A stretch of 64,000 bases of DNA from Selaginella moellendorffii. Lineage: Eukaryota; Plantae; Lycopodiophyta. Location: positions 186,001 through 250,000 of the forward strand of contig NW_003314407.1 in assembly GCF_000143415.4 (NCBI RefSeq). Reading direction: 5' to 3'. The notes beneath the pieces are model-generated. The model saw nothing but the letters and a program-made list of their open reading frames with translations, was not told the DNA's origin and did not search any database. The number at the start of each line of letters is the position of its first letter. Position 1 is the first letter of the stretch. A program made the position numbers and the translations under genes. This document shows positions 1 through 61,701 of this stretch, piece by piece.

Positions 1-565
1 ACGTAGCCGTACAAGCAAACACCGTTTCAGCAGTTAAAAGGGGTTTAGCAAAACTGTGAGGAAAGATCTTGTTTACGAACTTTTCCTGTAAACAAAGAGT
101 CCTCCGAAACTCCGTTACAGCAGTTACGAGACCAACTTTTGAAAAGGCAACTCCCTGGTGTAGAATAAAATCAATCAGTTATTCAGCTGCTTGCATTTTG
201 CGAGTAGCTTTTTATTCTTGAGGCAATTACAATTAATAGCATTCCAAAGCTTGAGATAAACTTCTTAGCATCTAGAGTCATTAGGGAACTCGAAAACTGC
301 CACTGCCGCTGCAACGTTCTTGAACGCACTAGAAGACCGTGGAACAGCACTGATATAAATATTCACATCCATGTTTTTGAGAGAAAAAATGTGATGCATT
401 AAAGGACTTTAAAAAAACTAAGGAACACCTCTAGAAAATAAAGTTTTAAATTTGAATTTTATTTCCACTCTTTCATAAAATCCAAAATTATTTATTTTAC
501 ATTTTAAATTAGAAGTCAAGCTGTGAACCTTAATAAGCCTAAGTCAAAAATTCATCCATAAAACA

Positions 566-1471
566 ATGTATAACATCATGAGAGTAATAATAGTTACCTT
601 AGTATTAATAATACATTTTAAAGTTTTTTCTGGACAACCTAGTATTAATGTTGGAGATATGAATTCTATAAATGAAATAGTTGTAAATGCTATTATACAA
701 GCTATTACAGATGCAATTAATGCTATACCAGATAATCCACTTCCTTCAAGACAAATGTTTTATGGAAATATTGTTGGTAAAAATCCAGAAACAAGAACTT
801 ATACCATTATAGGATATGGTGCTTTTTTCTTACAAAGAATTGGGGAAACTTGTAATATAGAATCTGGGGGGCATTTAGAATCTGGAGCTACTATAAGACA
901 ATCAATAAGTGGACTTTTTCAAGAAATAACTGAAAATTTAATAAATGATGCTGCCTCATATTTCATTGTAAGAAATAGCCAATTTCTTATTTATTATTTT
1001 ATTAGAAATTTTAATGGTCAACAACAAAGAAGGCAACAAGATTTAGCACAACATACTAAATGTAATATTTTTTCTAGCATGTTGATAAGTGGTTCCTTCA
1101 ATATGCCGTATCAGTATTTGTTATCAACACAATTTTTAATTTCTTCAAATAAAAAAACATATATGTATTTAAGTATTGATTGTAAATTAGGTATATATAA
1201 TGGTAAAATAGACTTATGGTTTTCAAAGAATTTAATTGAAGGAAAAAATTGCATTTTAAGATTACAAGAAGATGGAAATTTAGTTTTATATTCTTACAAT
1301 AATAAAGTTGTTTGGTCATCAAATACTAATTGTATGCAATATAATTGCTATAAAAATACATATTTAGTAATACAAAATAATTGCAATTTAGTTTTATATA
1401 CTATTTATCAGAAATCATTTAATATAAACCCTAAATTAGAAGCTATATGGGATTCAAAAACATTTTGCTAA
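566..1471 (+). CDS. Secreted protein: signal peptide + unknown ~140-aa domain + C-terminal bulb-type (GNA-like) lectin domain; intronless, very AT-rich
   Basis: Intact 301-aa ORF with a hydrophobic N-terminus (start 566 or 578). QxDxNxVxY motif QEDGNLVLY...VVWSSNT, plus QNNCNLVLY. Paralogue at 54814-55701. Confidence 0.85.
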   Translation: MYNIMRVIIVTLVLIIHFKVFSGQPSINVGDMNSINEIVVNAIIQAITDAINAIPDNPLPSRQMFYGNIVGKNPETRTYTIIGYGAFFLQRIGETCNIESGGHLESGATIRQSISGLFQEITENLINDAASYFIVRNSQFLIYYFIRNFNGQQQRRQQDLAQHTKCNIFSSMLISGSFNMPYQYLLSTQFLISSNKKTYMYLSIDCKLGIYNGKIDLWFSKNLIEGKNCILRLQEDGNLVLYSYNNKVVWSSNTNCMQYNCYKNTYLVIQNNCNLVLYTIYQKSFNINPKLEAIWDSKTFC

Positions 1472-2015
1472 AACTATCAGTTCAGTGCATTTTTAGTATA
1501 TTATTCAATAATAAACATAACTATATACTTTCTTATATTTAATTAAATTAAATTAGTTTATAATAATAACTAATTTATATTTAAACTATTCTATACTTAT
1601 AGGAAGTTAAATGCAAGCATAAAGCACTAATATTAAGTGGAATTTAAGTGTTAGCTCCCTAGCATATACTAGGAAAAGAAAAGAAAAATAAAACAAACTT
1701 TGAAAAAAATTACTATCCTTAATAGCATTTATATCTTGGGAAGAATATACACTATTGTTTCAGCCATTTTGAGTTCCTTTAAAAGAAAAATTTCATCATA
1801 ATATATGGGTACTAGCAAATTATAGGGGTTTATGACATGGAGATAAACAATATCTATATGATTATACTATGCAATCAAAATTCTAAACAAAAATATTTTT
1901 AAAATATTAACAATAATCTAGATATATCTAAACTAATTACTTTACTACATATTTTATATAGTCTTAAATCTAACTATGTGATATGCAACAACATTTTGGT
2001 TTGCTTAATAGTAGT

Positions 2016-5000
2016 TGTAAGATCCAAATGTACAGCTATAATGTCATATATTAATATTAGCATAGTGGGATTTTGATAGCTGTAGAATTGATTTCATTTC
2101 AAACCATTTGCTCATGTATATAAACTAAGGTTTTTGGGTTAATTGATATTCATATTTTTGTATTTTATTTCCATATTTCATACATTCATATTGGTGTAGG
2201 TGAGGGGCAACTTTGATTATCTCTAAGGCATGTTTGGATTTAGGATTTTGATTTAGATTTAGCTTTTGTATTGTTTAGATCTCCCTTTCTTTATAGCTTT
2301 TTTGATTTCTTCTTTTTTACTTTCTTCTTTTCGTTCATCTTCATGGTATAATAATAGCCTCTTCCTTTAACTTTGGAGTAGCAAATGGTGTAGTTGCTCA
2401 ATGTTATGTGGTTATAGTTGAATAATTAAACCCAGTTGATGGCAATATTCATGGCACATGGTACAGCTCTTCCTGCTTTTGATGCCAATCCTCACGTTCA
2501 GCTGAAGTTATTCCATAGATGATGTGTATAATCACTTTATGATAATTGCCTTATATCATTATTAGAATGATGTTTAGCATTTGCGTAGTTTCCCATATGT
2601 CTCTAAGGGACAATACTATAATGGTACAATGGTTTGAGCACAGCCACTTATAAGGATTGGAGCATTCTCCTGAACATCTTTAAATACAAATTTAGACATG
2701 TTAATAATTGTGATAATACCTTCCAACAATTATATTATTTTTGTCAAGGGCCATTTGAGTCAGTGATGCAATTTGGCATCTATTTCTAAAACTTTTTGCT
2801 TCGTGTGGAGCCAAATATGTTGGGGCGGATTAAATTGGGAATGTTGTGGCCAGCATCTTATCAAAATTTTGTAGAACTTATGTATGCACTTGTTTTAACC
2901 ACACTTGACAATGCTCTTTATTTAACACAACGTTATCAGACATTACCTCTTCCACTTCTTATTACACATCCTTTAAATCCACTTCCTATTTGCAATGGTC
3001 CTATTCCAATAAGGTTGATGTTACTTCTATTCGAGTTCAAAGATAAAAGTGAAGATGTGGTTGTGGCCATGATATTTGCTGTTGGGTGTGTGATAAAGTT
3101 GGTCACACTTATTGGTGTTATTGTTGTTTTTTAGATTAGCAACCTCTATTTCCTAGGTAAAGACCTTAGCATCAACAACATCTTATTCGTGCTACTACAA
3201 TAGAAAGTTTAGACACTGAGATGTTTATGGAAAATAAAAAGTCACACGAGTAACAGAGGGTCCTCACGTAAATAAGTCAGTGACCTCTCTATCTTTCTTT
3301 TGAGAGTATTATCAAGGGATTCACTTGGCACCAATTTATTCAGTGTTTACTTTTCAAACTTATTTTTATAACAAAAGGTTTCCTATTATTCTCTCTATGT
3401 TAGTTAATACAAGCATGAGTTTACCTTCTATTTCTTGGCTTATTACCACACATTGCCATCTACATTTGTGTCATGTGGCAAAGTTAGTTTTCATTCTTTA
3501 TGACAACAACCATACATATGTATATGCACGGGATGAGGTGAACCTAGTTATGTATGTGGGCAATTTCAAGCTTGAGCTACAGTTATTGCAAATAATGTTG
3601 AGTTAAGCTTTTGACCTCATCCTTGATATGGATTAGTAATAGCATAATCATGCCAAGTGTGACTTTGAAGCTTCTCCTCATTGTCTTATACTTTTTTATA
3701 TTTCTTCCATTTCTCTCACTTATATTCATTTTCATCCACCTCTGTTTGCATCACTTTTGTCTCCCTATTACTTCCTCTTATATTTCTGTTTTGTTCATTT
3801 ATTCCCTTTTCAAATCCCTCTAACAATCTTTGTATTGTAGTGGTTGATCGGCTCAATAAGGAGTATACTTGTTGCAAATGTGACTTCAAGTATTGAAAAT
3901 TACCTATCGGCTAGTCCTTACGGACACTCTTACCATACTGTCACGATGGCAAGAGGTTAGTATTGCTAATTCCCTTTATTGGCCCCTCTTGTTCAAGTGT
4001 TAGTAAACTAGGCTTAGCATCTGTACTTGGCCGGATGAGCATAAGGAAGGAATTCCTAAGTGTCTATTTAGCTGAGCATACTTGGCCCGGCTTGTTAGTT
4101 CTCTTTTGCACTGTCTTGCATTGGCTTGACAAGAACCCTCGCGTATTGAGATTGGTCCCTCAATATCGCTGAATGATAGCTTACCGTGTCTGCCAAACAC
4201 CCTCGCTATTATGCCCTTTGTATTAGTCTTATTTCGGTCCCAAATGCTATTTATGGAAAGTGTCCAGATTTGCTCATTTGGCATATCTACAGAATGTAGA
4301 GATTGGCTTGAACACAATGGTGTTCGTTCCATATCCAAATTCGCAATCTAGTGCCATTCCATATCTAGTAAGTTTCGAGCTTGTCCCAGAGATTAACTCC
4401 TAATACTAAGGGAGGCTTGGGGTGAAAGCCCAAAGAGTGTGTTCCTCAAGGGGCGGGGGGGAGGGGGGCTATGGGGGGTTCCAAATATATAGTAAGGATA
4501 GTGGGTAGGTCGGGCATGGCCGACCAACTTGAGGCATAGTTTAGCTCTTGCTTGCATGCCTGTTCTTGTTTTGCGTCCGACTTGGGTCTAAGCTCAAATT
4601 CTATTCCATGCTAGTTGGTGGAGTACCCATGTCCTTGCGTTAAGCCACCGGTATGCCGAAATAGCGCCAGACTCCGTTTGGCTCCGTTTTGCGTGCTGGT
4701 CCTAGCATTGGGATGCTAGTTGCTCCAGGATTGTTCCAAATCGCTCCGGGCTCTTGTCCCTTCGCTCCTTAAGCTATATGCTTGGGAGTTGCTCCGTGGT
4801 TCAGTTCCGTTGCTCCTATGCTCCATGCTTGGGAGTTTGGCACTGTTCCTTCATTCAGTGGCCCAAGGCCCTGAACTCATGTTCCACACCACTGTCCTTT
4901 GGACACGTGGCACAAAGAGGGTTTAGGTTTTGCTTCGTGGTCTTATCCTATGGTAAATCACCATAGGATAAAAGGGTCAAAACCACATGCACTACAATAT

Positions 5001-7439
5001 CAATCTCTTTGAATTTGACCTATCATCTGGGACTAAAATAGCAGTATGTTATTTTATTCCCATTGGGAATGCTAGTTCAATCAAGATTCATGTTTGTCGT
5101 CGATCACCAAAAGAGATGAAAATTTTATATGCAAACATCAAGGAAATATTAGAAAAGGGTGTTATTCGAAAGTTGCGGAATTCTTGAATGTGTAAACCTC
5201 ATCTTGTGACAAAGCCTAATAGGAGTATTCACTTTTGCATTGACTATTGTATATCAAACAAAGTAACAATCCCAGATGTGTATTTTATTCCTCACATTGC
5301 TGATCTCTTGGATCATCTGGGAAAAGTCATTGATTCGCTAAGTTAGATATTGTTTTTGGGTACTAGCAAGTGTCAATGGTCAAGGAAAAGATCCTTAAGA
5401 TTAGTTTTTATACACTATTTAGTTTGTATAAGGTTTTGGTGATGCTGTTTGGTTTGAACAATACTCTAACAACCTTTCAGTAGATGACGGACAAGGTTCT
5501 TTAGAATACGCTAGAAGTGATTGCTAACTTCATCAATAATGTTTTCATGCACTCAAAGGGGATGTGGGAGGAACATATTTGTGCTATTCGTAAGGTGTTA
5601 GATTAGCTATCAAAAGTTGATTTAAAACTAAAGTGGTCGAAGTGTTTGTTTAGGTCCAAGGACATGCTTTATCTTGGGTATTATATTTCTCATGAGGGAA
5701 AGATGATCTTGATAAACTTGTGGATATTCTGAAGTTTTGTATTCCAAAGTGTGTGAACGATATGTAACACTTCTTGGGCAAGGTACAGTATTTTAGTTGT
5801 TTTGTTGATCATCTTTCTAATCGCACTACACTGTTATGAGTGTTGCTGAAGTCATCAACATTATTTTTCATCTGGTTTGTGGACTGTGAATGGGCATTTG
5901 TGGACTGTGGATTTGAAGGCTTCACGATAGATTTGAGAATTTTGCATCACTTAATAATGATTTACTATTTTGGCATTTACATTCTTAATATCACCATGAG
6001 AACCGTTTTCTTTATTTTGTGAGAACAGATCCTAATGATTATTTATAGCTAGTGGTGCCTTCAATCTTTATTTCATGCTTTCTTCATAGCTACCATGATT
6101 CTCTTATTTTAGGTAGGCATATAGGATATCTTCTTATGATTAAGAACCTATACAAGTCTTTTGATTGGCCAAAGATGCAACGTGATATTAATTGGTATGT
6201 GCATAGTTGTATTTGGTGCTAAACTCTTAATACTCCCCCTAGTAATAGAAGGATAATTAAAGTTAATTGTAGTTTTCCGTCCATTTGAGTTAGTGGTGTT
6301 TGATTTGATAGAGCCTCTTCCATAGTCAATTATTGACAATGAGTATGTCATTATTGTTTTTGATTACATTACTTGCTATGTGGAAATTGAAGCTCTTGCT
6401 AGTGTGTTTGTAATTGCTATTTGATACTTCTTCCTCAATTGAATAGTGTTTTAATATTGTTGTTCAGAGTGAATTCTTTTGGATAATAGTCTTTCATTTA
6501 TGGCTAAGGCATTTTATGTTTTGACGTCTCATTTGGGGATACACCACATTTTTATGAGTGCTTATTATCCACAGTCAAATGGTTTGGTGGAATGACTCAT
6601 TTAGATCTTCAAAAAGATGATCATGAAGTACATGAACTTTTAGCATTCGAATAGAGATGGTTATTTACCATCTTTTAAATATATATATGTCATAGGGCTA
6701 TAAAGTTTTGTTGATGCTTTACCATATAAACTCTTTTATAGTTATGATTCAATATTACCAATAGAGTAAGTTTACCTTTGCAATTGGCATAAACTACTGA
6801 TGTTAAGTTTTTGGATCAGTATTTGACAAGTATTCTTCCACTTATTGCAATAGAGTTTACTAAACACCTAGGCCATGTACAAATAGGATAACAACAACAC
6901 TACAACTCCCATCATCATCCACTTATGAAGTACAAAGTGAATGACTTGGTGTTAATCTATTTTCTTAATTTTATGGTATGTGGTTTGTTTAAGGGGCTCA
7001 TTGTTCAATGGAAGGGACTATATTGAGTGTTATAGCAAGTTAGACTGCAAATTTATAAAGTTTGGCATGACATCTAACAAGCTAATCCTCTAGAAATTAT
7101 GCATGTTCAATAGCTTAAACACTTTGTACAAAGGGATTAAAAATAATTGACACCACCTATAAATTCACTAATGCCTCTTCTTGATATTCCTCCAGATTCT
7201 AGCCCATCCACAAAAGAACCTTGATTATGTTCTATCATTCCAAAAGGAGGGGATGATGTGAACTCAAAGTGTATGGCTACAATGTCGTATATTAATATTA
7301 GTATAGTGGGATTTTAATAGCCATTTTAGATTAAAACCATGATTGGTTTTAATCTAAAACTTTTCTATATAAACTAAGGTTTTTGGGTTAATTGACATGC
7401 ACATTTTTATATTCCATTTCTATATTCTATGCACTCATA
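2016..7439 (+). mobile_element. Degenerate Ty3/Gypsy LTR retrotransposon
   Basis: Similar ~180-bp LTRs at 2016-2190 and 7257-7439, PPT AAAAGGAGGGGA at 7242-7253, and flanking TAGT/TAGT. Decayed RT (EILEKGVIR, FCIDY, ~5000-5700) precedes decayed integrase (GIDLIEPLP-like, SAYYPQSNGLVE, ~6290-6600), i.e. Gypsy order. Confidence 0.85.
3870..4996 (+). mobile_element. Solo LTR nested in the Gypsy element
   Basis: TGTTGCAAATG...GCACTACA termini. Homologous in reverse to 43376-44014 and 47869-48381. Flanks ATACT/ATATC fit a deaminated 5-bp TSD. Confidence 0.75.
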
Positions 7440-8037
7440 TAGTGTAATTTTTATTTATTAATCTAATTAATCAAATGGTAGTTTATAATTATAAACATGC
7501 TCATAATTTATAACACAAGATTAATCTTATTTAATATCAAGAATAAAATAGAATATACTAGGAAGTGCTTAGGAAAGTTTATAAATTATAAACAACAAGA
7601 TTAATCTAAATGAATAACAACCATTAGATGGTAGAATATCCTAGAATTTCCAAGAATATTTTATTTATATTTCTAAGCAAACCAAAACGGTAAAATAAAG
7701 TTATAAAAGAATAATTAACTTAATCATTATTACATATTTTTAAGGACAGTTGCATAGAATGTATCGAGCATCAAAGCATTTTAGGCGCCCCATGAGAAAA
7801 ATCTATATTTGAAAGAGTATAAAGTAGCCTTTGCAATCATAAAATATAAAATCATATCACTCAAAGGAGATTTATGAATCTGAATAAACTTTTTAACTTA
7901 CCAAAACTTCCTACTTACTATTTTGATATCCTAGTGGATCATTTTCCCAATTGCCCTCAATTTGTTTCAGACAAAAGCTCTCCTCTTTTGACATCTTGGG
8001 TTCAATCTTATGCTTTCATTTGGACTCAGTTATATTC

Positions 8038-8603: not shown

Positions 8604-10350
8604 TTATGACTCCTGCACCGAAAGAGCGCAACTTTTAGACTCTGCTACTTGGTGAAAGCCAACAAATGGAATCTACTTACATCGGGGTCGGTGTTGTAGG
8701 GGCTCTGGATATCGACGCCGATGCCAGCGGGACTTACGGGTCCTGGAGAAGCTTCACGCTTTCCATTGGAGTAGCTTTTCTCTGGCGACAAACTTCGGAC
8801 TGGAGACCGCTCGCTTTTCCTGCAAAGTAGATGAGAAATGTGTCCAGAAGGAGACGTTTCTTACCTTGCTTGCTCCAAAGGACTTGCGTCTCTGTTCGCC
8901 GTCGTCACTGGCCTTGGTGATCCCAACGCTGTTTCCCGGACAGGACTCGATAACCGAGCTGGAGCAGGACTGAAAGAGAGAAAAGAACCTCAAAAAGCGT
9001 GTGCTAAAGATCAGGAGGCAATGCACGCGTACCTTAGTGGTGCTGGTGACGAGTTAGTACGTTCGACGGGCCTTCCTCTTGCCTCGCGATGATCATCTTC
9101 TGCATAGCGGTCCCTGCTCCGGCTCCTACTTCGGCCGCCTCTTCCAACCTCGGCATCAAAGCGATCCCGCTCGTATCTTTCTTTGGTCCGACCAACGTCG
9201 TGTGAGTCCCGGCTTCGTTCATGTTGATGCCTGTAGTCACGTTCGTGTCTATCTCTGCGCTCGTATCTGTCTCTCATGCGATCGTGCTCATAAAAGTGAT
9301 CGTCCCGGCTTCGTTCGTGCTCGTATCTGTCTCTTCCGCGGAAGTTGTCGCGATAATCCCTCCCTCGTCCATACTCTTCCCTGTATCGACTGTGCAAAAG
9401 ATTCACGTCAGCTGCCGCCAACCATTTCTATGAACTGTAAGAAAATGGCCAACCTTGGTCGTCTCGGGCTCCGACTCCGTGACCTGCTGCATATGGACGT
9501 TGTTATTCTTCCACAATATCTGCCAGAAGCAAGCACATTGTTCTGAGCACGATCCGCGAAGAAATGAAGGAAGAAAAACAAGCAGCCACGCAGAAAATCT
9601 AATCATCTAAGACTCCTGCATTTTGAGAGATCAAATCGTGGATCGTGTCGCCTCCCTCCCAAAACAGACTCACATCTTTTCATCGTTCCGACCATACTTT
9701 GCAAACTGTACTGCAATCTGCCTTCCATCAATGGTCATACCTGCGTGATGCTAGGGAAATTAAACACACAACCATGACTTACGTTGATTCAGAGTTCTTG
9801 TCATACTTTGCAAACTGAACCATGATGTTACGTCCGTTCAGATTCTTACCTGCGAAAAAAAACGCGCATTTGTCACTGGAGCTCACGGAAAACAAGAAAG
9901 AACAGCACAAAATGCAATGCATGTACCGTCCAGTCTATCGATCGCCTTTTGTGCTTCATCCACATGCTTGTAGCGTACAAATGCGAATCCTCGTGACTCA
10001 CCAGACCTAGAGAATGGAAGATAGTCAAAAGAGAGCAAAGAAAAAAACCAAACAACCAAAACAAAAACGGTTTATTTTTTGCTCTCTAGCTTACAAACCT
10101 GCGATCTCTGGGGATGAAAATGTCCACAACTTTGCCGTAGCGATCGAAGAGAGGGTAGAGATCATCGGCGGTAGTTCCTGCAGTCCCACATTTTCATTTC
10201 ATTACATCGCTCGCGAATTGGAGATCATGGAAGAGAAAAGGGAGCGATCGATCGATCGATCGATCCAAGCTTACTGAATGTGATGTTGAGGACGAGAAGC
10301 GAGTACGTATCCCGTATGTCGGGCGGGCCGGCACGTCCGAAATGCGACAT
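8604..10350 (-). CDS. SC35: SR splicing factor of the SC35/SRSF2 subfamily (RRM + RS/RD-rich region), multi-exon
   Basis: MSHFGRAGPPDIRDTYSLLVLNITF / RTTADDLYPLFDRYGKVVDIFIPRDRR / GESRGFAFVRY / VQFAKYG, followed by RSRSRS exons. GT-AG introns keep frame to TAA at 8604-8606. Confidence 0.93.
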
Positions 10351-10482
10351 TGTTCCCTCGACAATGGCGCATGCATCCACACAAACCCTAGAACGAAGAA
10401 GAAGAAGAAGAAAGCCAACCACAAATCCAACAGCCCAGATGCGCCCACCGTTCGATCCCCCATCCAACGGCTAGGGATTGGA

Positions 10483-12657
10483 ATGCGCAGGAATGACGCC
10501 TCTATCGATCGAATCGCGCTCGTTTTGCGCGGGTGTGGGCAGTCGCGAGATCTCTCCGCGGCCAGGCGAGCGCACTCTCGGATCCGCGAGCTGGATCTCG
10601 GACCGGACAGGTATCTCGCCAATCTGCTGGTGGAGATGTATGGGCGGTGTGGCTCCGTGCACGAGGCGCAGTGGGTCTTCGATGCGATCCCTCGCCCCAA
10701 TCTCTTCTCGTGGACGCTCATCCTCTCGGCGTATGCCCAGAACGGGTATCTCGCCCGGGCAGCGGCGATCTTCCGCGAGATGCCGCACAGGGACGTGGTG
10801 CTATGGAATTCGATGATGAATTTCCACGCGCAGGCCGGGGACGCGGACGAGGCGAGAGCCATCCTCGATCGAATGCCGGCGCTGGAGACGATCTCTTGGA
10901 ATGCGGTGATCCAGGCGTATGCCCAAGAAGGGCGTGTGGAGGAAGCAGCAAAAGTTTTCATAGAGGTCCCGGAGCGCGATGTGGTGTCGTGCACGACGAT
11001 GATCGGGCTCTACTCCCAATCATCGCAGCCCCAAGAGGCGGAGAGGGTCTTCGATCGAATGCCGGAACGAGACATTGTGTCGTGGAACGCAATGATCCAG
11101 GGATACGCCGACAACAATCGCCCAGACCAGTTCCAGGAACTCTTCAAGAATCTCCCTGAAAAGAATGTGGTTTCGTGGACGAGCATGGTGGCTGCGCTCG
11201 CGCAATTTGGCAAGATCTCTGGTGCCAGAAAGATCTTTGACGTGATGCCGCTGGCGAGCGCAGTAACCTGGAACACGATGCTTCAGGCATATGCCCAAGC
11301 TGGGCATTTGGACGATGCGAGAAGCCTTTTTAATTATATGCCTGAGAAAGATCCTATATCGTGGACAGTGCTACTCATATTGAACGCGCAGAATGGCCAT
11401 CTTGACTACGCAAAGATTTTATTTGAAGCAATGCCCAAGCACAGCCTTGTTTGCCACAATGCAATGATCCAAGCAAATGCCCAGTCGGGTCATCTGGTTG
11501 CTGCAGTAACGCTGTTCTTGGGCGTTGTAGAACGAGACGTGGTATCGTTTAACGTGGTGTTGGCAGCTCTCGCACACTCTTCTAAAGCTGGAAAAGCCCG
11601 CTCTGTTTTCGAGAGGATGCCACAGTGGGACTTGGCGTCGTGGAACACCATGGTTTTTGCATATGCCCAAGGAGGGTATGTTGCTGCCGCGAGAAAAGTG
11701 TTTGATGAGATGAGAAGCTTCCGCGACGTCGTGAGCTGGAACACGCTCGTCTCGGCCTACGCGTCTGTCGGGCGGATGGACAAGGTGGAGGAGATGTTTG
11801 AGAAAATCCCGCAGCGCGGCGTCATCACTTGCAACTCGATGATCGCCGCCTACGCGCAGAGGTGCTGGCGATCGGGCAAGGAAGCGAGAGCTCTCTTCCA
11901 CGCAATGCAAGAGAGGAACCTGGTGACTTGGAACGCGTTGGTCCAGGCTTACGGCATCAACAGACAGCCCCGGGAGGCGAAGGCTGTGTTTGACAAGATG
12001 GCGAGGCACAGTCTCGTTTCTTGCAATGCCATGCTCTCGGCCTATGCTTGTGCTGCTCTCATGGTCGACGCAGCCATGGTGTTCGATCTCATGCCTTACA
12101 AAGACACGGTTTCATGGAACACCTTGATCGCTGGTTATGCTCAGAACGGACACATGAGCTCTGCGTGGCACTTCTTTTCGAATCTCGAGTTCGCCGACTC
12201 CATTTCCTGGAATGCAATGATCGCTGGCTATGCCCAAAACGGGTATAACAAAGAAGCAATCGAGCTAGCCAGGTTGATGGACCTCGATGGCCGCGTGGTA
12301 GCCGACGAAGTCACACTGCTCAGCGTGTTGACGGCTTGCTGCCACAGCGGAGTGATAGAACGCGCTTGGGAGTGTTTCCTGTCCATGCAATCCGATCGTG
12401 GACTGCGTCCACTTCTCGAGCACTACTCGTGCATGGTGGGAATCTTGGGAAAGAATGGACAGCTTGGTCTGGCGAGGGAGCTTATAGAGACGATGCCATT
12501 CGTCCCGGATTCCGTGATGTGGACGACACTCCTGGCATCTTGTAAACTTCATGGTGACGAGGAGATTGCGAGCAGGTCCGCCGAGGAGTCATCCGAGCTC
12601 AGCCAGGCCAACTCGGCTCCTTACATGCTTATCTCCAACATGTACTCGATCGCTTGA
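10483..12657 (+). CDS. PLS-class (SS-rich) PPR protein with E region, no DYW; organellar RNA-editing specificity factor
   Basis: ~31-aa repeats (RDVVSWNAMI..YAQ.G), HYSCMV..LG..G.L and terminal APYMLISNMY. Start placed at MRRND; the upstream in-frame ATG 10342 overlaps the SC35 start. Confidence 0.92.
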   Translation: MRRNDASIDRIALVLRGCGQSRDLSAARRAHSRIRELDLGPDRYLANLLVEMYGRCGSVHEAQWVFDAIPRPNLFSWTLILSAYAQNGYLARAAAIFREMPHRDVVLWNSMMNFHAQAGDADEARAILDRMPALETISWNAVIQAYAQEGRVEEAAKVFIEVPERDVVSCTTMIGLYSQSSQPQEAERVFDRMPERDIVSWNAMIQGYADNNRPDQFQELFKNLPEKNVVSWTSMVAALAQFGKISGARKIFDVMPLASAVTWNTMLQAYAQAGHLDDARSLFNYMPEKDPISWTVLLILNAQNGHLDYAKILFEAMPKHSLVCHNAMIQANAQSGHLVAAVTLFLGVVERDVVSFNVVLAALAHSSKAGKARSVFERMPQWDLASWNTMVFAYAQGGYVAAARKVFDEMRSFRDVVSWNTLVSAYASVGRMDKVEEMFEKIPQRGVITCNSMIAAYAQRCWRSGKEARALFHAMQERNLVTWNALVQAYGINRQPREAKAVFDKMARHSLVSCNAMLSAYACAALMVDAAMVFDLMPYKDTVSWNTLIAGYAQNGHMSSAWHFFSNLEFADSISWNAMIAGYAQNGYNKEAIELARLMDLDGRVVADEVTLLSVLTACCHSGVIERAWECFLSMQSDRGLRPLLEHYSCMVGILGKNGQLGLARELIETMPFVPDSVMWTTLLASCKLHGDEEIASRSAEESSELSQANSAPYMLISNMYSIA

Positions 12658-16870: not shown

Positions 16871-16948
16871 GCGATTCGTTTGCTCTCTCTTGACAAAAAC
16901 AAGTGTAATAAACTGTTAGAAAATTTCCAACTTTGGGTATTTCTTTCT

Positions 16949-18907
16949 ATGCGAAGATTTTCGCTGCCTGGATCATCTCCAGCCGCGGCATTGGTCTTGA
17001 CACGATCGCTGTGCTGCTTCTCGGCACACCATGTCCAGGAGCTCGCCCAGATGATCCGCTCCTGCGGTGAAGCCAGGGATTCCGCCGAAGGGAAGCGCAT
17101 CCATTCCGTGATTGCCAGGAGCGAGCAAGCGTCCGGAAATCCTTTCCTCTGGAACTTGCTTGTGGAGATGTATGGGAAAGTTGGCAGTGTCCACGACGCC
17201 CGCGGCATTTTCGATGAGATGCCCGGGATCAACATGTTTACGTGGACAATCATGTTTCATGCATATGCCCGAAACGGGCAACTTGAGAAAGCAGCACAGT
17301 CTTTTGATTTGATGCCTCAGCGCGATGTTGTTGCCTGGAACTCTATGCTGCAGATTTTTGGGGAGCACGAGAAAGTTGACGACGCACGAAAGACATTCAT
17401 GGAGATGCCGGCCAGAACAATCTCGAGCTGGAACGCGCTTCTTACTGCATATGCCCAAAACGGGTATTTGCAAGATGCGATGGCCGTTTTTGATCGGCTG
17501 CCCTTCTCGGACGTCGTGTCGTGGACGAGTCTGTTTGGGTTCCATGCCAAGAACGGGTATATGAACGAGGCCAGGATGATTTTTCTCACAATGCCTGAGA
17601 AGAACTCCACGTCTTGGACCACCATCATCTCGGCTCTCATGCGGTGTGGCGATTTCCAGGCCGCCAAGAACTTCTTTGGCAAGATGCCCCACCATGCTCG
17701 AGTGGTGTGGCTGGTTATGATGCAAGGCTACCTCCAAAACTTTCAGTTCGACGTTGCGGCCAGCATGTTTGATCGAATGGAGGAAAAGGATATTGTTTCG
17801 TGGAACATTTTGATCAATGCCGTGGCGCAGAACGGCCAAGTCGGTCGAGCGAGAAAGATCTTTGACGCGATGCCCAAGCACGACATGGCAACGTGGAACT
17901 CGATGCTGATCGCGTACGCCGAGAAAGGGAGGTTGAGTGAAGCAAGGACCATCTTCGACAGCATGACACACAGGAACATCATCTCGTGGAACTCGATGAC
18001 GCAGTCTTACATTCTAAACGGTCACTTTGAGGAAGGAAAGAAGGTTTTCGATCGAGCGCCTCAGGTGGACGTGATTTCCACCAACATGCTTCTCTCCGCC
18101 AATGCCGAGGGAGGAAATCTCGAAGAGTCGAAATCCATTTTTGACTCCATGGTCATGAGGGACGTTGTGTCGTGGAACGCCATGGTTCACGCTTACGCCA
18201 TTCACAATCTCCTCGAGAGTGCCGAGTCTACGTACCGGAGAATGTCGCAGCACGACTGTGTGTCGAGGAAGACGATGATGGCGGCTTACGCTCGAGAGGG
18301 TGACTTGGAGCGATCGAAGCTCTTTTTCGACGACATGTCGGACAGAGACACGGTCTCCTGGAACACTCTGATCGTTGCATACGCTCAGCGCAACGATGTC
18401 AAGAACGCAAAACTGGTTTTTGACAGCACTCCAGTGAAGAACCCGATATCCTGGAACGCGATCATGACAGTCCTCTCCCAAAACGGCCATTACGCCGAAG
18501 CGCTCGAGTTCTTCCGCGAGATGGAGCTCGATGGTGGAAGCAAACCCACGGACGTGGGCTTCACCAATGCATTGGTGGCGTGCAGCTATGGTGGTCTCGT
18601 CGCCGAGGCCAGAGTTTTTTTCCTCTCCATGGTCGAAGACCACAACTTAACACCGAGGTGGGAGCAGTACTGCTGCATGGTAGACATTCTCAGTCGAGCA
18701 GGACAATTGGAAGACGCCGAAGATCTCGTAGAAAACATGCCATTCTCGAGCGGCATGGCGGATTCCAAAGCTCTTCTCAGTGCTTGCCATGTCCAAGGCG
18801 ATGTCGAGCGTGCCACAAGAACAGCAGGCTCCATGTTTACTCTGGGCTTGAAAGCTTCTGCTCCCTACGTGCTTTTGTCTAACAGCATTGGTCATCTCAA
18901 AGAGTAA
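16949..18907 (+). CDS. PLS-class PPR protein with E region, no DYW
   Basis: Tandem PPR motifs, YCCMVDILSRAGQL, ends APYVLLSN. First ATG at 16949 gives a transit-peptide-like N-terminus. Confidence 0.92.
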   Translation: MRRFSLPGSSPAAALVLTRSLCCFSAHHVQELAQMIRSCGEARDSAEGKRIHSVIARSEQASGNPFLWNLLVEMYGKVGSVHDARGIFDEMPGINMFTWTIMFHAYARNGQLEKAAQSFDLMPQRDVVAWNSMLQIFGEHEKVDDARKTFMEMPARTISSWNALLTAYAQNGYLQDAMAVFDRLPFSDVVSWTSLFGFHAKNGYMNEARMIFLTMPEKNSTSWTTIISALMRCGDFQAAKNFFGKMPHHARVVWLVMMQGYLQNFQFDVAASMFDRMEEKDIVSWNILINAVAQNGQVGRARKIFDAMPKHDMATWNSMLIAYAEKGRLSEARTIFDSMTHRNIISWNSMTQSYILNGHFEEGKKVFDRAPQVDVISTNMLLSANAEGGNLEESKSIFDSMVMRDVVSWNAMVHAYAIHNLLESAESTYRRMSQHDCVSRKTMMAAYAREGDLERSKLFFDDMSDRDTVSWNTLIVAYAQRNDVKNAKLVFDSTPVKNPISWNAIMTVLSQNGHYAEALEFFREMELDGGSKPTDVGFTNALVACSYGGLVAEARVFFLSMVEDHNLTPRWEQYCCMVDILSRAGQLEDAEDLVENMPFSSGMADSKALLSACHVQGDVERATRTAGSMFTLGLKASAPYVLLSNSIGHLKE

Positions 18908-29194: not shown

Positions 29195-29385
29195 AAAGGA
29201 TCCTTTTCATTCCACAAAAATGGTCATAGTCCACAATATCTCCTTACCAACAATCTTATCAGCAGTGTCAGAGAAGACAGCTCACTATCCAGATCTGGAG
29301 GATGGCGAACACATCACGGCCAACTTCGTTGCTGCCACTTCTTCGGCATCCAACTGATACGGCTCTCCATGTTCAGAGAACGAGG
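29195..29385 (+). pseudogene. MSI-like last-exon fragment (copy 4), overlapping the 3' end of the convergent PPR gene
   Basis: CATAGTCCAC...CCAGATCTGGAGGATGGC matches 22510-22600. Confidence 0.65.
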
Positions 29386-53534: not shown

Positions 53535-54813
53535 CTCAGCCATTAAATGAAGGGATAAAACTAAATTTTTGAGCATATAACCAAAGAGTGAAGGAATTAA
53601 AACATGGAATTACTCATGAACATATAACCCAAAGAATAATAGGACAAATATACAAAGTGACATTAAAACAATTCTAAAGCATTCATCATCTCAATACTAG
53701 GACTAACATGCAAAACAAAGTTAAACAAAGTTTGGCATATATCAATAGTCTAGCACAAGGATATAGCATAATTTTAGCATACCAATAGCCTAACATAAGG
53801 ATTCCACCAACTAGTATGGTATGGTTGGGCAAAGTGTTGTATAGTTAGTATATTAGTTTATAGTGTTCATAGCTTTATGAGGTTAAGCTAGGCCTTAGCT
53901 ACTACAAATCTATGGCTGAAGACATAAATTAGAAGTATAGACTAATTGATTGATTAATCAATCATATGCACACTCCACCTCATTTGTGTTTATTAATGTT
54001 TAACATCTGTAAAAGTGTAATAGAATTTGTGTCAGGAATAGGATCTTTCTATGCATTCGAGAGTGTGAAGTAAAGCAACTTGAGACTTGCAACATCCCAT
54101 GCTAGCACCTAAAGTTAAAGTTCTATAATATGAGACTTCTAATGTTGTTTTTCTTGGCATGTGGAAACCCCCTTATACACCATCTAGGGTTGCAACATTT
54201 AACACTCGGGTTCTTATGGTTCTTATAGCTGGCTAGGGAAATCTAATTGCCCCAAATGGTCTGTGAGTGACTAAGAGAGAGAGTTGTGTCTTTTCTTGGT
54301 TGGGTCCCTTGCCTAAGGCTTTTATAGGTTGTGTTGACATCTCATGTAAACAAGTTTAATGTTCAAGGGCTGATAAAGCCTTGATTGACACTTCCACAAT
54401 TTGAGCTATCAAGCTGGTGACACATGCACCAATCAAGACAAGTTTGACTATTCACCCTTTACTTAGGTATCACAAGCCACCCATGATGTGGGAACAAGTG
54501 GTATCTTTCACAACAAAATGTTGGTGTACTTTGTATTTGTACTTAATTCCTAGTCATCCACTTGAAAATAAATTAGCTACTGCATTACAAGACAAATAAA
54601 AGATTCAAACTAAAACAAAAATCCATCTGGCTTGGAATGTCTTTCATAAATTATCTTGAACCTTAGAGACAAAAAAAATATCTATAAGTTTACATTTTAA
54701 AAAATCTTTATTTTATTATTTTAACTTATTCTAAATTTTATATAAATAAATTTTTATATATCTATAAGGTTAAAAACAGTTTTAATTTTATTTCTTTGCT
54801 ATTACTATTTGCA

Positions 54814-55701
54814 ATGAGAATAGCATTAAATATTTTCATTTTACTACTTTTATTTAAAGTTTCTAAACAAATTGAATATCAGACTGGAGTATTTGATGCT
54901 ATAAGTGAAAATGTTGTACATGCTATTATAGGAGCTATTAGAAATTCAATTAATAATATACCAAATAGTATAATTCCATTAAGACAAAGTGTACATGGAG
55001 AAGTAGATGTTCAACATCCAGATAGAACTCATACATATGTTGGATTTGGTATTTTTGTATTAGAAACAATTAGAGAATTTTGTACTATAAATTCCGAAGG
55101 AGGTGTAGAATTAGGAGTTAACATAAGAAATTCACTAAATCACATTTTAGAAGAGTCTTCTGATGAGATGCTCAATTTTGCTGCCTCATTTATTATTATA
55201 AACACTGAGCATTTTTTAATTTATTATTTTGTTAGAAATTTTAATAATCAACAACACAGAAGACAACAGATTTTAGTAAGACATTCTCAATGCTATTTGT
55301 TTTCAAGCTTTTTAATAAGTGGTTCTATCAATATGCTGCATCAATATCTATTACCTTCACAATTTTTAATTTCTTCAAATCATAAAGCACATTTATATTT
55401 AAGCTCTGATTGTAACTTAATAGTATATATGGGTATAAAAACATTATGGTCTTCAAATACTTCAAAAAAAGGAACAAACTGTATTCTAAGATTGCAAGAG
55501 GATGGAAATTTAGTTTTATATTCTTATGATAGTAAACCTGTTTGGACAACAAATACTTATTGCACTTCTTATAATTGTTATAAAGCTACATATTTAGTTA
55601 TACAAAATGATTGTAATTTGGTTTTATATATTGGATACCAAAAAACATTTAGCACTAACCCTAAATTATATTCTGAATGGGATTCAAAATCTTTTTGCTA
55701 A
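54814..55701 (+). CDS. Secreted unknown-domain + bulb-type lectin protein, paralogue of 566-1471
   Basis: First ATG 54814 (MRIALNIFILLLLFKV), QEDGNLVLY and QNDCNLVLY motifs, colinear with the first copy to the terminal WDSK.FC. Confidence 0.85.
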   Translation: MRIALNIFILLLLFKVSKQIEYQTGVFDAISENVVHAIIGAIRNSINNIPNSIIPLRQSVHGEVDVQHPDRTHTYVGFGIFVLETIREFCTINSEGGVELGVNIRNSLNHILEESSDEMLNFAASFIIINTEHFLIYYFVRNFNNQQHRRQQILVRHSQCYLFSSFLISGSINMLHQYLLPSQFLISSNHKAHLYLSSDCNLIVYMGIKTLWSSNTSKKGTNCILRLQEDGNLVLYSYDSKPVWTTNTYCTSYNCYKATYLVIQNDCNLVLYIGYQKTFSTNPKLYSEWDSKSFC

Positions 55702-55702
55702 T

Positions 55703-56246
55703 ACATATTTTCTTTATACTTACCATTTCTGTTTCTTATATTAGATATGTAAATTTATTAATAAAATAGTTAATCATGTTCTAATATCTTATTAAATTGT
55801 TTCTTTCATCACTGTCTTGTCTTTTAATAAGGAGAAGGTTTTAATTTTAATCATAATTACAATTTAAAATTTTCTACCTTGTTTTTATAAGTATTTAAAT
55901 TTCTATATTATTAAAATTTCCAACTTGGTAGCAATTGCCTAAAAAGCACCGCTCATGAGCAAACGATCGATGATATCAACATATTTTCTTTATACTTACC
56001 ATTTCTGTTTCTTATATTATATATGTAAATTTATTAATAAAATAGTTAATCATGTTCTAATATCTTATTAAATTGTTTCTTTCATCACTGTCTTGTCTTT
56101 TAATAAGGAGAATTTTAATCATAATTACAATTTAAAATTTTCTACCTTGTTTTTATAAGTATTTAAATTTCTATATTATTAAAATTTCCAACTTGGTAGC
56201 AATTGCCTAAAAAGCACCGCTCATGAGCAAACGATCGATGATATCA
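55703..56246. repeat. Tandem duplication of the intergenic region (276 + 268 bp)
   Basis: 55703-55978 and 55979-56246 are nearly identical; I see one substitution and one 8-bp indel. Confidence 0.92.
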
Positions 56247-57992
56247 TCTCTCGAGCTTGCTCATCATCGAATCTAGCACAGGAAGCTCCTTGACAAGCTC
56301 TTGCCATTCAGGCATTCCCTGTAGCAGCACCCAAATCACTTTTGCTCTCTAGCCAACTAGATTAAGAAGATTTGCTTACCCGACCCGATTTGCGGATTCT
56401 CCCATCGAGCCGGAGCACAATGAAAACCTCTTCGCCACCGGTTACTCCTTCCGACTCTTGCTGCTCAAAGATCCACCTGATTGTCGTTTCCACACTCTAA
56501 ACGCTCAAACAAGGTAGAAACAAGATACTCACCTCTCCCATTCTGCTTGAGAAACCACCTCCGCTACAAATCGCTTCTCACTCTCGAGCACTGCCTTCAG
56601 TGCCGCGTCCTGCGCTCGTTTTTGAAAATCATCCTGAATCACGAGAGAAAAGGGAAATTTAGGAACCACGGATTGGATAAGCTTACGCTGCCGGAGCCAG
56701 CTGCTGGAGCTTTTACGGAGCGTCCAAATCCTTTCTTCTTAGGCGTCTCGTCCTTTTTCCTCCACTCGACCGGAATCAAGAGCACGCCTCGTTGCAGGAG
56801 ATCTTTGCGGTATCTCTCCGCCTTCTCCAAAGCTCCCTTGATCGACTCTTTGGTACCGGCCAATATCACCTTTCGCTCCAAGAGAACATACAAGCAAGCT
56901 TGGTTTGATATTGGAAAGAAAAAACTTCTTACCGGTCGTGTGATCCCTCGAAGTTGCACCACCTCCACGATGCGTCCAGTTCCGAGCCGGACAGGAAGCC
57001 TTGACAAAGTCTCGTTTCTTGTGATTTGAGACATTTGCGTCTCTTCTTTCTTGCTGTCCCAGATAAACAAGGACACAAAAGCCACTATACCTGTGAAAAA
57101 GCGCAACCTTGATTAGATGAAAACACACTCTCATCACATTTACCTGCGAGGTCTATTGCCAGATTCTGTGCGGTCTCCGTGACGCTTGGAGCGTCCTCTC
57201 CCCCCTGCAGTGCACGAATGAGCCTCGGGACCGTGATGAAAGTCGCGATCCCAGCGGCAATCGTGAATGCGACGTAGAAAAACTTGCGAACGCCACGAAA
57301 CGGTGCCTGGACTTCGCTGATGAGCTTTAAGTCTCTTCGGAAGCTGCTTCCAGTGTCTTCGCCACCTTTCCGAGCCTGTCCAGTGCACGGCAAAGCTCAT
57401 CACTTCGGGCCAAGCAAAGATTGAGAGAGAGAGATTGGCTCAACCTCGTCCTGGAGAGCCTTGAACTCTGGAGACGCTCGGAAGGGAGCAAGGTCCGGAT
57501 CATTGAGGATGACATGAAACTTGACGTTGTAATCACGCAGCGCTGTTTGCAATGCCTGTGCTGCTTTCGCGGGCTCTTCCCTGGAAACAAATGGTCACGA
57601 AAGGAGAGAAGAAACGAAAGAGTCGAAGAAAGCACGAAACCTTGAAGCATGGCAGCAAGCTTTGTTGTAGTACGCGGCCTGCGCCTCATCGAAGTTTGGA
57701 TTCATGGCCAGGGCGGTATCAAACTGATGCAATGCGTCCTTCACCTGCCTAGTGAGAACAAACCAACACGTATGGAATCATCCACATCCATGGAGCTTCG
57801 CTAAAGTACCCTTCCTTTGGAGAAGAGTGACAAGCCCAGATTGACGGCGTCGGTTGCTGTTTTCACCTGTGATTCGCTTCCATCCTTGGCAGCGCGCACC
57901 CTGATCGCGATCTTGGCGCGCCCAAATGCGAGGCGACGAGGGGCGGCACCACACCTGAGCGACACGCACCCGGAAAAACACAAGACATCCAT
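56244..57992 (-). CDS. LPA1: LOW PSII ACCUMULATION 1 (TPR + DUF3493), PSII assembly factor, multi-exon
   Basis: VNLGLSLFSKGRV, FRRDLKLISEVQAPFRGVRKFFY, RNETLSRLPVRL, C-terminal MSKLER. Confidence 0.92.

Positions 57993-60960: not shown

Positions 60961-61701
<741 letters not shown>

What the first reader, a model, noticed from the sequence alone, without database searches (positions are those of the whole stretch)
566..1471. Secreted 'unknown domain + bulb lectin' fusion family: candidate novel defence toxin or effector
Seen: two intact, colinear paralogues 54 kb apart (566-1471 and 54814-55701). Each has a signal peptide, a ~140-aa domain I cannot assign (V..AII.AI...IN.IP....P.RQ...G; G.G.F.L..I.E.C.I.S.G; N.AAS; FLIYYF.RNF), a Q-rich RRQQ linker and one GNA-type lectin domain. 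By eye the N-domain is much more diverged (roughly a third identical) than the lectin (roughly two thirds). Lectin site 1 is degenerate, site 2 is intact, and site 3 is intact only in copy 2. Known: plant B-lectin domains usually occur alone, in tandem, or N-terminal in S-domain proteins. A C-terminal lectin behind an unrelated domain resembles carbohydrate-targeted toxin or bacteriocin layouts. Inference: a fast-evolving secreted anti-herbivore or antimicrobial family.
Basis: partly seen in the sequence, partly recalled or inferred. Interest (0 to 1): 0.8.

Follow-up and report, generated by a model that had tools for sequence, protein, structure and literature searches.

The report
Hidden spikemoss two-domain secreted lectin genes
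Two intact, unannotated and extremely AT-rich genes in the spikemoss Selaginella moellendorffii encode secreted proteins that join a cysteine-poor domain, predicted to fold like the ginkgo antifungal lectin Gnk2 (DUF26), to a snowdrop-type mannose lectin; the family is conserved by selection, but no RNA from the one copy tested was seen.

Summary
Both ORFs (566-1471, 54814-55701) are intact, colinear, 55% identical, and alike only within the coding sequence.

Each encodes a signal-peptide-like start, a ~130-aa N-domain, a Q-rich linker and one GNA/B_lectin domain.

They belong to a family of at least seven intact S. moellendorffii loci plus two broken copies. The public annotation holds only 60-90 aa "partial" lectin fragments of some paralogues.

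The "unknown" N-domain has no sequence relative. Its AlphaFold model (pLDDT 71) matches the Gnk2/DUF26 fold in three libraries: VIA Z 9.2, Foldseek top hit, and ESM Atlas top five all PF01657. It lacks the DUF26 cysteine motif.

The N-domain is not evolving neutrally or fast overall. Codon-model omega is 0.33 for the N-domain and 0.16 for the lectin, and omega = 1 is rejected.

All members have GC3 of 12-14%, against 64-75% in neighbouring genes. They are almost free of CpG and sit in ~1.6-kb AT-rich blocks. No donor, virus or transposon signature was found.

No RNA-seq read covered copy 2, although its neighbours were covered. Copy 1 was not tested.

Most likely this is a native, lineage-specific two-module carbohydrate-binding secreted protein, probably for defence and expressed only under certain conditions. 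The scan had already found this family on other DNA of this genome.

The parts
566..1471 (+). Copy 1: complete single-exon gene, 301 aa plus stop
   Evidence: ORF list. It is 55% identical to copy 2. GC is 24.9% and GC3 13%.
566..631 (+). Copy 1: signal-peptide-like N-terminus (aa 1-22)
   Evidence: Read from the sequence: a basic n-region followed by a 12-15 residue hydrophobic run. All family members share this layout. Not tested with a predictor.
632..1015 (+). Copy 1: N-domain (aa 23-150), predicted Gnk2/DUF26-like alpha+beta sandwich with a single invariant Cys (C96)
   Evidence: No Pfam, PDB or protein-database sequence match. AF2 model pLDDT 71, pTM 0.68. VIA Z 9.2 to 4xre_A (Gnk2) and 6gre_B (PDLP5). 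Foldseek top hit is 3a2e. ESM Atlas top five are all PF01657.
1016..1063 (+). Copy 1: Q-rich linker (aa 151-166) ending in invariant Cys166
   Evidence: Alignments. pLDDT is below 50 in the full-length model. RRQQ is not conserved in L003, L004 or L007.
1064..1468 (+). Copy 1: GNA-type (B_lectin, beta-prism II) domain (aa 167-301) with seven invariant Cys
   Evidence: Pfam PF01453 E 2.8e-7. PDB phmmer E 2e-12 to gastrodianin. Foldseek on the full model: 1xd6, E 6e-6, TMt 0.66.
1172..1198 (+). Copy 1: first sugar-site motif, degenerate (SIDCKLGIY)
   Evidence: Alignment.
1265..1291 (+). Copy 1: second sugar-site motif, intact QxDxNxVxY (QEDGNLVLY), invariant in all eight sequences
   Evidence: Alignments.
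1373..1399 (+). Copy 1: third sugar-site motif with D to N (QNNCNLVLY); intact in every other member
   Evidence: Alignments.
400..2200 (.). AT-rich, nearly CpG-free block around copy 1 (GC 24%, 1 CpG in 1.8 kb)
54814..55701 (+). Copy 2: complete single-exon gene, 295 aa plus stop. Signal peptide 54814-54861, N-domain 54862-55245, linker 55246-55293, lectin 55294-55698.
   Evidence: There were no RNA-seq reads in three runs, while its neighbours had 3-200x.
54600..56246 (.). AT-rich, CpG-poor block around copy 2 (GC 24%). Its 3' part is a 268-bp unit duplicated in tandem (55703-56246).

Best explanation
Both genes belong to a Selaginella moellendorffii family of single-exon genes for secreted, two-module carbohydrate-binding proteins.

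Module 1 is a cysteine-poor domain with the alpha+beta sandwich fold of Gnk2/DUF26. Gnk2 is a mannose-binding antifungal protein, and the fungal lectins LDL and Y3 and the KP4 toxin share this fold.

Module 2 is a GNA-type beta-prism lectin that keeps one invariant and one mostly intact mannose-type site.

Shown:
- the architecture;
- the family (at least seven intact loci and two broken ones);
- purifying selection on both modules;
- the extreme AT and CpG-poor composition of every member;
- absence of RNA for copy 2 in three RNA-seq runs.

Inferred:
- The protein is secreted.
- It cross-links or coats mannose-rich glycans of fungi or other attackers through two different lectin-type modules.
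- The modules are possibly held together by a C96-C166 disulfide.
- The genes are kept silent, perhaps methylated, except in a tissue or condition not sampled.

The family is most simply native and grew by local duplication, with birth-and-death turnover.
For: - ORFs, homology and chance.
- Lectin domain.
- N-domain fold: AF2 pLDDT 71; VIA-wide Z 9.2 to Gnk2 (rmsd 2.8 A over 103 of 108 residues) and to PDLP5, and Z 8.1 to PDLP8, above the next tier of Zt-KP4 6.4, LDL 6.3, Y3 6.2 and KP4 5.2; Foldseek top hit ginkbilobin-2, prob 1.00; ESM Atlas top five all PF01657, TM 0.54-0.62.
- The secondary-structure order beta-alpha-beta-beta-alpha-beta-beta is compatible with the DUF26 fold, described as two helices on a central antiparallel sheet (PMC6368629).
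- Further paralogues L002-L007, each with the same layout and eight invariant Cys.
- Selection: GY+F3X4 omega 0.33 (N-domain) and 0.16 (lectin). For the N-domain, omega = 1 is rejected (2 delta lnL = 47). The close pair L004/L002 gives omega 0.2-0.5, with the CDS 96% identical against about 89-92% in the flanks.
- In-situ growth: W2 and the L003/L001 pair lie in the same chromosomal region, about 50-60 kb apart, because L005 on GL377689 is colinear with window 54-64 kb. W1 lies 54 kb upstream of W2.
- Composition is the same (GC3 12-14%) in paralogues saturated at synonymous sites. The bias is therefore long-standing in this genome and not a recent import.
Against: - No transcript evidence: zero reads on copy 2 in three runs. 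Copy 1 was not tested.
- The fold assignment rests on a five-sequence alignment and a model of medium confidence.
- No sequence-level link to PF01657, and the defining DUF26 cysteines are absent.
- No sugar binding or antifungal activity has been tested.
- Copy 1 has lost the Asp of its third site.
- Two relatives are broken (L001, L005), so some members are decaying.
- Codon usage is alien to the host, which a purely native history does not explain by itself.
Confidence: 0.6

Rival explanations
1. Foreign origin. The family descends from a gene acquired from an AT-rich donor (fungus, protist or giant virus), or is carried by a mobile element. Its AT-rich blocks would then be the imported DNA.
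For: - GC3 is 12-14% against 64-75% in neighbouring genes, and CpG o/e is 0.07 against about 1.0.
- The AT-rich blocks have sharp edges.
- The fold class also occurs in fungal lectins and the virus-encoded KP4.
- KP4-like genes reached mosses by horizontal transfer according to the literature (reference in PMC12513842).
- Polarised recent substitutions lean AT to GC in intact copies (30 against 12), as amelioration would predict. Counts are small and biased by parsimony.
Against: - No full-length or N-domain homologue was found in 1.84 billion representatives (top 150 shown) or in 5.8 billion clusters.
- IMG/VR gave nothing and BFVD folds gave nothing.
- The lectin-domain tree puts the family on a long isolated branch, next to unnamed metagenome proteins and a Nymphaea lectin.
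- Flanks of old paralogues share no terminal repeats or other element structure.
- Paralogues with saturated dS all keep the same composition and cluster locally, which argues for long residence.
Confidence: 0.12
2. AB-toxin-like effector. The N-domain is a toxic moiety of the KP4 killer-toxin kind (channel-blocking or membrane-active), and the lectin delivers it to glycans on the target. A disulfide and a cleavable linker would connect the two.
For: - KP4 and Zt-KP4 appear among the fold matches (Z 5.2-6.4).
- One invariant Cys in the N-domain plus an odd seven in the lectin part leave room for an inter-domain disulfide.
- A flexible linker with RR occurs in four of the sequences.
Against: - The KP4 matches are within the range the tool calls common (Z under 8) and clearly below Gnk2/DUF26.
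- There is no toxin or enzyme Pfam hit.
- The dibasic site is absent in L003, L004/L002 and L007.
- KP4's multiple disulfides are absent.
- Gnk2 itself acts as a lectin, not as an A-chain.
Confidence: 0.13
3. Decaying or non-functional family: silent relics in heterochromatin-like AT-rich DNA with no present role.
For: - Zero RNA-seq reads on copy 2.
- Full-length models are absent from the databases; some paralogues are annotated only as 60-90 aa fragments.
- CpG loss resembles, and exceeds, that of the transposon debris nearby.
- Two broken relatives: L001 has a stop plus a frameshift, and L005 has a 1-bp deletion.
Against: - Seven intact ORFs of about 300 codons at a composition where each has a chance of about 1e-13 of being open.
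- Omega is 0.16-0.33 and neutrality is rejected.
- Homology among old paralogues survives only in the CDS.
- Eight cysteines and the sugar-site motif are invariant.
Confidence: 0.1

Closest known systems
Ginkbilobin-2 (Gnk2) and single-DUF26 secreted proteins (sdCRRSPs; Pfam PF01657 Stress-antifung)
   Same: Both are secreted plant proteins with a predicted alpha+beta sandwich of about 105-130 aa, two helices on an antiparallel sheet (Z 9.2, rmsd 2.8 A over 103 residues). Gnk2 binds mannose and is antifungal. Selaginella has native sdCRRSPs and single-DUF26 kinases (PMC6368629).
   Different: There is no sequence similarity detectable by HMMER. The C-8X-C-2X-C motif and the three disulfides are absent, with one Cys only. 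The domain is followed by a GNA lectin, a combination that PMC6368629 and the lectin surveys (PMC6362431) do not report.
GNA-type (bulb, B_lectin, beta-prism II) lectins such as GNA and gastrodianin
   Same: The C-terminal 135 aa match by sequence (E 2e-12) and by fold. The Cys pair spaced 23 residues apart is kept (C206, C229), as is at least one QxDxNxVxY site.
   Different: There are five extra invariant cysteines. The first site is degenerate. The domain sits C-terminal to an unrelated module instead of standing alone, in tandem, or N-terminal in S-domain kinases.
Fungal lectins LDL and Y3, and KP4 killer toxins (KP4, Zt-KP4)
   Same: Same general fold class (Z 5.2-6.4). All are secreted and act in interactions between organisms.
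   Different: These matches are weaker than those to DUF26. There is no sequence similarity, the cysteine patterns differ, and none of them is fused to a GNA lectin.
Lectin-like bacteriocins (LlpA/putidacin L1, pyocin L1) and type-2 RIP AB toxins
   Same: A lectin module is used, or could be used, for targeting. LlpA and pyocin L1 match the lectin part (E 5e-7 to 5e-6).
   Different: LlpA-type proteins are tandem B-lectins without a Gnk2-like module. RIPs have an N-glycosidase A chain and ricin-B lectins. Neither layout is met here.

Membership tests
B_lectin / GNA-type lectin (PF01453) | Match to the family profile above the curated cut-off | tested here: met
   Copy 2 scores 42.2 bits against a cut-off of 32.4. 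L006, L007 and L004 are also above it. Copy 1 (31.4) and L003 (28.3) fall just below, but copy 1 matches GNA-family PDB chains at E 2e-12.
B_lectin / GNA-type lectin (PF01453) | Beta-prism II fold | tested here: met
   Foldseek on the full-length model: 27 PDB hits at E <= 0.001; those listed are GNA-type lectins, plus lectin-like bacteriocins in the weaker rows. The best is 1xd6, E 6e-6, TMt 0.66. The model is of low confidence in this part (pLDDT 50-60).
B_lectin / GNA-type lectin (PF01453) | QxDxNxVxY mannose-binding motifs in the three subdomains | tested here: inconclusive
   The second motif is invariant. The third is intact in all members but copy 1 (D to N). The first is degenerate in all. 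Sugar binding itself is not testable here.
DUF26 / Gnk2 (PF01657 Stress-antifung) | Sequence match to the family profile | tested here: not met
   No PF01657 hit at E <= 10 for any of five N-domains. The profile against PDB sequences gave no hit at E <= 10.
DUF26 / Gnk2 (PF01657 Stress-antifung) | C-8X-C-2X-C motif and six Cys forming three disulfides (PMC6368629) | tested here: not met
   The N-domain has a single invariant Cys (C96).
DUF26 / Gnk2 (PF01657 Stress-antifung) | Alpha+beta sandwich: two helices on a central antiparallel sheet | tested here: met
   Tested on a predicted model only: VIA Z 9.2/9.2/8.1, Foldseek top hit 3a2e, Atlas top five PF01657.
KP4 killer toxin | KP4 fold, disulfide-rich small toxin, sequence family match | tested here: inconclusive
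   Fold Z is 5.2 (1kpt) and 6.4 (8acx), in the range the tool calls common. No Pfam hit. The cysteine pattern is absent.
AB toxin (type-2 RIP-like) | Enzymatic A chain, processed linker, inter-chain disulfide | tested here: not met
   No enzyme or toxin family hit. The dibasic linker is not conserved. A C96-C166 disulfide is possible but cannot be tested with these tools.
Lectin-like bacteriocin (LlpA) | Two tandem B-lectin domains | tested here: not met
   Only one lectin domain is present; the N-domain is not a B-lectin.

The most novel reading that the evidence does not exclude
The family may be a set of normally locked, CpG-free 'stealth' genes for a lectin-guided toxin. In this reading a cysteine-free KP4/Gnk2-type module is delivered to mannose-rich targets by a GNA lectin. 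The module would be either an old foreign acquisition or a relic of the form from which plant DUF26 domains arose. The genes would be switched on only in a rare tissue or on attack.
Probability: 0.15. Interest if true: 0.75.

Novelty: new variant of a known kind. Interest (0 to 1): 0.5.

Why it matters
If the fold assignment holds, this is a cysteine-free version of the DUF26/Gnk2 module. It sits in the lineage where DUF26 receptor kinases first appear, and it is fused to a second lectin type. That bears on how DUF26 arose and on its link to fungal lectins.

The family also shows that a well-studied reference genome hides selectively maintained genes. Annotation missed them because of their alien composition and their silence in RNA-seq.

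The nearly CpG-free, ~1.6-kb AT-rich blocks around each member are an unexplained compositional phenomenon. It can be tested with existing methylome data.

In practice, a two-module mannose-binding protein is a candidate antifungal or anti-insect protein.

Tried and rejected
- **Whole-protein word-based search:** no hit, not even to itself, so the full-length gene is not in that collection.
- **N-domain profile search:** nothing.
- **HMMER against 1.84 billion representatives:** 2922 hits. All of the top 150 matched through the lectin, and none carried the N-domain when re-scanned with the N-domain profile. Weaker N-domain-only hits could be hidden below the 150 rows shown.
- **ESM Atlas by features:** no usable hit for W1. 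For the L004 N-domain the best scores were 0.86 or less, to STT3-type families, which I take as chance.
- **Hits with an N-terminal stretch of about 140 aa before a lectin** (P0067, P0076, P0123 and others): these proved to be tandem lectins.
- **IMG/VR scan:** none. **BFVD fold search:** TM 0.31 or less.
- **Pairwise NG86/LWL85 dN/dS:** gave omega above 1 for the N-domain. I rejected this as biased by the 12% GC3, and the codon-frequency models reverse it.
- **Polarised substitution spectrum:** counts are too small and parsimony is biased by the AT-rich outgroup, so the result is inconclusive.
- **Lectin-domain tree and labelling of neighbours:** no donor signal.
- **Conserved flanking motifs or element ends among old paralogues:** none.
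- **Link to the spikemoss receptor-kinase family with 'unknown module + GNA' noted earlier by the scan:** could not be tested.
- **Logan index:** listed no RNA run that holds the stretch.
Full report
**1. Observation**

- They are colinear, 55% identical over 280 residues with a single gap, and 74% identical as DNA.
- The DNA similarity starts and stops with the coding sequence (652-1474 against 54885-55704). The window holds no third copy.
- At their base composition about 9% of random codons are stops. An open frame of 300 codons therefore has a chance of about 1e-13.
- In simulations none of 20,000 neutrally mutated copies stayed open at half the observed divergence.
- The C-terminal 135 residues are a GNA-type lectin:
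  - Pfam B_lectin gives E 1.3e-10 for copy 2. Copy 1 gives E 2.8e-7, one bit under the curated cut-off.
  - phmmer against PDB gives E 2e-12 to gastrodianin, followed by GNA, garlic and daffodil lectins and the bacterial LlpA and pyocin L1.
  - Foldseek on the full-length model returns GNA-type lectins.
- Identity is 43% in the N-domain and 66% in the lectin.

**2. Context and organism**

- Neighbouring ORFs are three E-type PPR proteins, a B3 protein, a subtilase prodomain and PsbO. This is a land-plant nuclear segment.
- Earlier notes of the scan name the genome as Selaginella moellendorffii. The loci fetched below come from its assembly GCA_000143415.2.
- Downstream of copy 1 lies decayed gypsy-type retrotransposon sequence.
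- Copy 2 is followed by a 268-bp unit duplicated in tandem. After that come a minus-strand multi-exon gene and the PsbO pair.

**3. The family is larger and almost unannotated**

- The exhaustive HMMER search gave 2922 hits, all through the lectin.
- Among these hits, and those of a lectin-profile search, are S. moellendorffii 'partial' proteins of 60-90 aa: EFJ07126, EFJ07128, EFJ04329, EFJ13259, SELMODRAFT_8086, _7677 and _29034.
- I fetched their loci. Each fragment is the lectin core of a full ORF with the same layout:

| Locus | Coordinates | State |
|---|---|---|
| L003 | 5428-6312 | intact, 294 aa |
| L004 | 5398-6291 | intact, 297 aa |
| L002 | 3506-4399 | intact, 297 aa; 96% nt identity to L004, probably the other haplotype |
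| L006 | 5449-6336 | intact, 295 aa |
| L007 | 5389-6303 | intact, 304 aa |
| L001 | 16 kb from L003, 98% identical | broken: in-frame stop and a frameshift |
| L005 | counterpart of copy 2 | broken: 1-bp deletion at the end of the signal-peptide coding part |

- L005 lies on scaffold GL377689, which is colinear with window 54.2-64 kb at 95-98% identity.
- L003 and L001 lie on the same scaffold, 50-60 kb beyond L005.
- Copy 1, copy 2 and the L001/L003 pair therefore form a regional cluster. This points to growth by local duplication, with birth-and-death turnover.
- The full-length proteins are absent from the 5.8-billion-cluster collection, and the query did not even find itself.

**4. The N-domain**

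- It has no Pfam match at E <= 10 and no PDB sequence match.
- It has no relative by word-based search and no counterpart among the 190 lectin proteins held.
- Folded alone from the five-sequence alignment, it gave a model of medium confidence (pLDDT 71, pTM 0.68). The order of elements is beta-alpha-beta-beta-(loop with the single Cys)-beta-alpha-beta-beta-alpha.
- Three searches agree on the fold:
  - The Foldseek-independent VIA-align scan of 48,161 chains puts PDLP5 DUF26 (Z 9.2), Gnk2 with mannose (Z 9.2, rmsd 2.8 A, 103 of 108 residues) and PDLP8 (Z 8.1) on top. A second tier follows with Zt-KP4 (6.4), the L. decastes lectin (6.3), Y3 (6.2) and KP4 (5.2).
  - Foldseek's best PDB hit is ginkbilobin-2 (E 0.027, prob 1.00, TMt 0.64).
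  - The five nearest ESM Atlas cluster sets all carry PF01657 (TM 0.54-0.62).
- LDL and Y3, which appear in this second tier, are the fungal lectins that Vaattovaara et al. reported around DUF26 when they solved the PDLP ectodomains (PMC6368629).
- The same paper defines DUF26 by six cysteines in three disulfides, including C-8X-C-2X-C. The present domain has one cysteine.
- I therefore file it as 'Gnk2/DUF26-like fold, not a DUF26 family member by sequence or cysteine pattern'.
- The tool warns that Z of 7-8 is a typical best score for models without clear relatives. The assignment is supported, not proven.

**5. Selection**

- Pairwise counting methods gave omega above 1 for the N-domain. 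With GC3 at 12% they underestimate dS.
- A tree-based codon model with codon frequencies (GY+F3X4, eight sequences) gives omega 0.33 for the N-domain, 0.16 for the lectin and 0.23 overall.
- Fixing omega = 1 for the N-domain costs 23.7 log-likelihood units (2 delta = 47, 1 df).
- The close pair L004/L002 shows omega 0.2-0.5. Its CDS is 96% identical, against about 89-92% in the flanks.
- Both modules are thus under purifying selection, and the N-domain is about twice as relaxed.
- Positive selection at individual sites was not tested.
- Eight cysteines are invariant in all members: C96, C166, C206, C229, C256, C261, C273 and C301.
  - C206 and C229 have a 23-residue spacing that matches, from my own knowledge, the conserved GNA disulfide.
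  - One Cys in the N-domain and one at the linker end suggest an inter-module bridge. This is inference.
- The RRQQ linker is not conserved (RGQQ in L003, QHAKTN in L004, a long N/Q-rich insert in L007), so no processing site is conserved.

**6. Composition**

- Every member has GC 25-29% and GC3 12-14%. The PPR, B3 and PsbO-like ORFs in the window have GC3 64-75%.
- Each gene sits in an AT-rich block of about 1.6-1.8 kb with sharp edges.
- CpG is almost absent: 1 CpG per about 900 bp, observed/expected 0.07. The figure is about 1.0 in the PPR genes and 0.2-0.4 in the transposon debris and AT-rich intergenic DNA of the same window.
- CHG trinucleotides are not clearly depleted in the CDS, although they are in the debris.
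- Paralogues saturated at synonymous sites share this composition and cluster locally. The bias is therefore long-standing in situ.
- A history of CG methylation and deamination in normally silent chromatin would fit, but it was not tested.
- The literature says S. moellendorffii lacks angiosperm-type gene-body methylation and shows mCG and mCHG at similar levels (PMC5410703). The CpG-only loss is therefore not fully explained.
- I found no donor:
  - no viral contig;
  - no viral fold;
  - no labelled neighbour in a lectin-domain tree, where the family is monophyletic on a branch of at least 2.4 substitutions per site;
  - no shared element ends.

**7. Expression**

- The index listed no RNA run holding the stretch.
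- I laid three 2026 RNA-seq runs of the species (9.2 million records read from each) on 54000-59500.
- Depth is zero from 54000 to 56023, which includes all of copy 2.
- In the same runs the adjacent minus-strand gene has 3-13x with ten spliced introns, the PsbO-like gene 2-20x, and PsbO up to 200x.
- Tissue and condition are not known to me, and copy 1 was not tested.
- Earlier follow-ups on other members report the same silence.

**8. Mechanism**

- Best reading (0.6): a native, secreted, two-module glycan-binding protein. A Gnk2-like module and a GNA module, both from mannose-binding antifungal or anti-insect lineages, would give two kinds of sites on one chain for coating or cross-linking mannose-rich surfaces. 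Expression would be limited to an unsampled tissue or to attack.
- Rivals: foreign origin (0.12), lectin-guided KP4-like toxin (0.13), silent relic (0.10). The evidence for and against each is given in its own section.

**9. Novelty**

- The parts are known kinds.
- I found no description of the combination, the cysteine-free form of the fold or the compositional islands.
- The scan itself had already found and followed up this family on other DNA of the same genome (s1-410722, s1-432183, s1-433225). It had also noted copy 2 of this window (s1-355635).
- I reached the fold result before reading those notes. It agrees with s1-410722 and goes further than s1-432183 and s1-433225, which left the fold unknown.

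**10. Limits**

- The broken copies (L001, L005) were only described and read as they stand.

Noticed in passing
L005:9400-9480 (GL377689, counterpart of window 54814-54900): The other-haplotype or duplicate copy of copy 2 is 94% identical in protein. It has a 1-bp deletion in a short T run at the end of the signal-peptide coding part, which puts the rest of the ORF out of frame with the ATG. This could be a null allele or an assembly error.
   Followed up: partly
L001:5440-6323 (GL377689): Pseudogene copy, 98% identical to L003 and 16 kb away, with an in-frame stop early in the N-domain and a frameshift in the third lectin motif.
   Followed up: partly
window 55703-56246: A 268-bp unit is duplicated in tandem (96% match) directly after the stop codon of copy 2, inside the AT-rich block. 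Only part of it has a counterpart in L005.
   Followed up: partly
window 56200-58050 (-): Expressed multi-exon gene with ten short introns of 53-69 nt (GT..AG on the minus strand) and one alternative junction (skips 122). Its counterpart in L005 carries TPR_16 and DUF3493.
   Followed up: no
window 58050-59300 and 59336-64000 (+): The PsbO-like paralogue and the canonical PsbO lie side by side. Both have reads, and the canonical gene is about 10-20 times deeper. Many heterozygous-looking SNPs appear in the reads across 56.4-59.4 kb.
   Followed up: no
window 2200-8000 and 40299-40733 (-): Decayed retrotransposon sequence: reverse-transcriptase and integrase-like ORF pieces, and an RVT_1 fragment at 40299-40733. 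GC is 32-37% and CpG o/e 0.2-0.4.
   Followed up: partly
window 10342-12657, 16880-18907, 29314-31509: Three intact single-exon PPR genes (one with an E motif) within 21 kb, with GC3 of 64-68%.
   Followed up: no
window 54047-54222 vs L003:4504-4679: A ~176-bp dispersed repeat, 90% identical, lies about 0.6-0.9 kb upstream of two different family members. It is probably a small transposon fragment.
   Followed up: no
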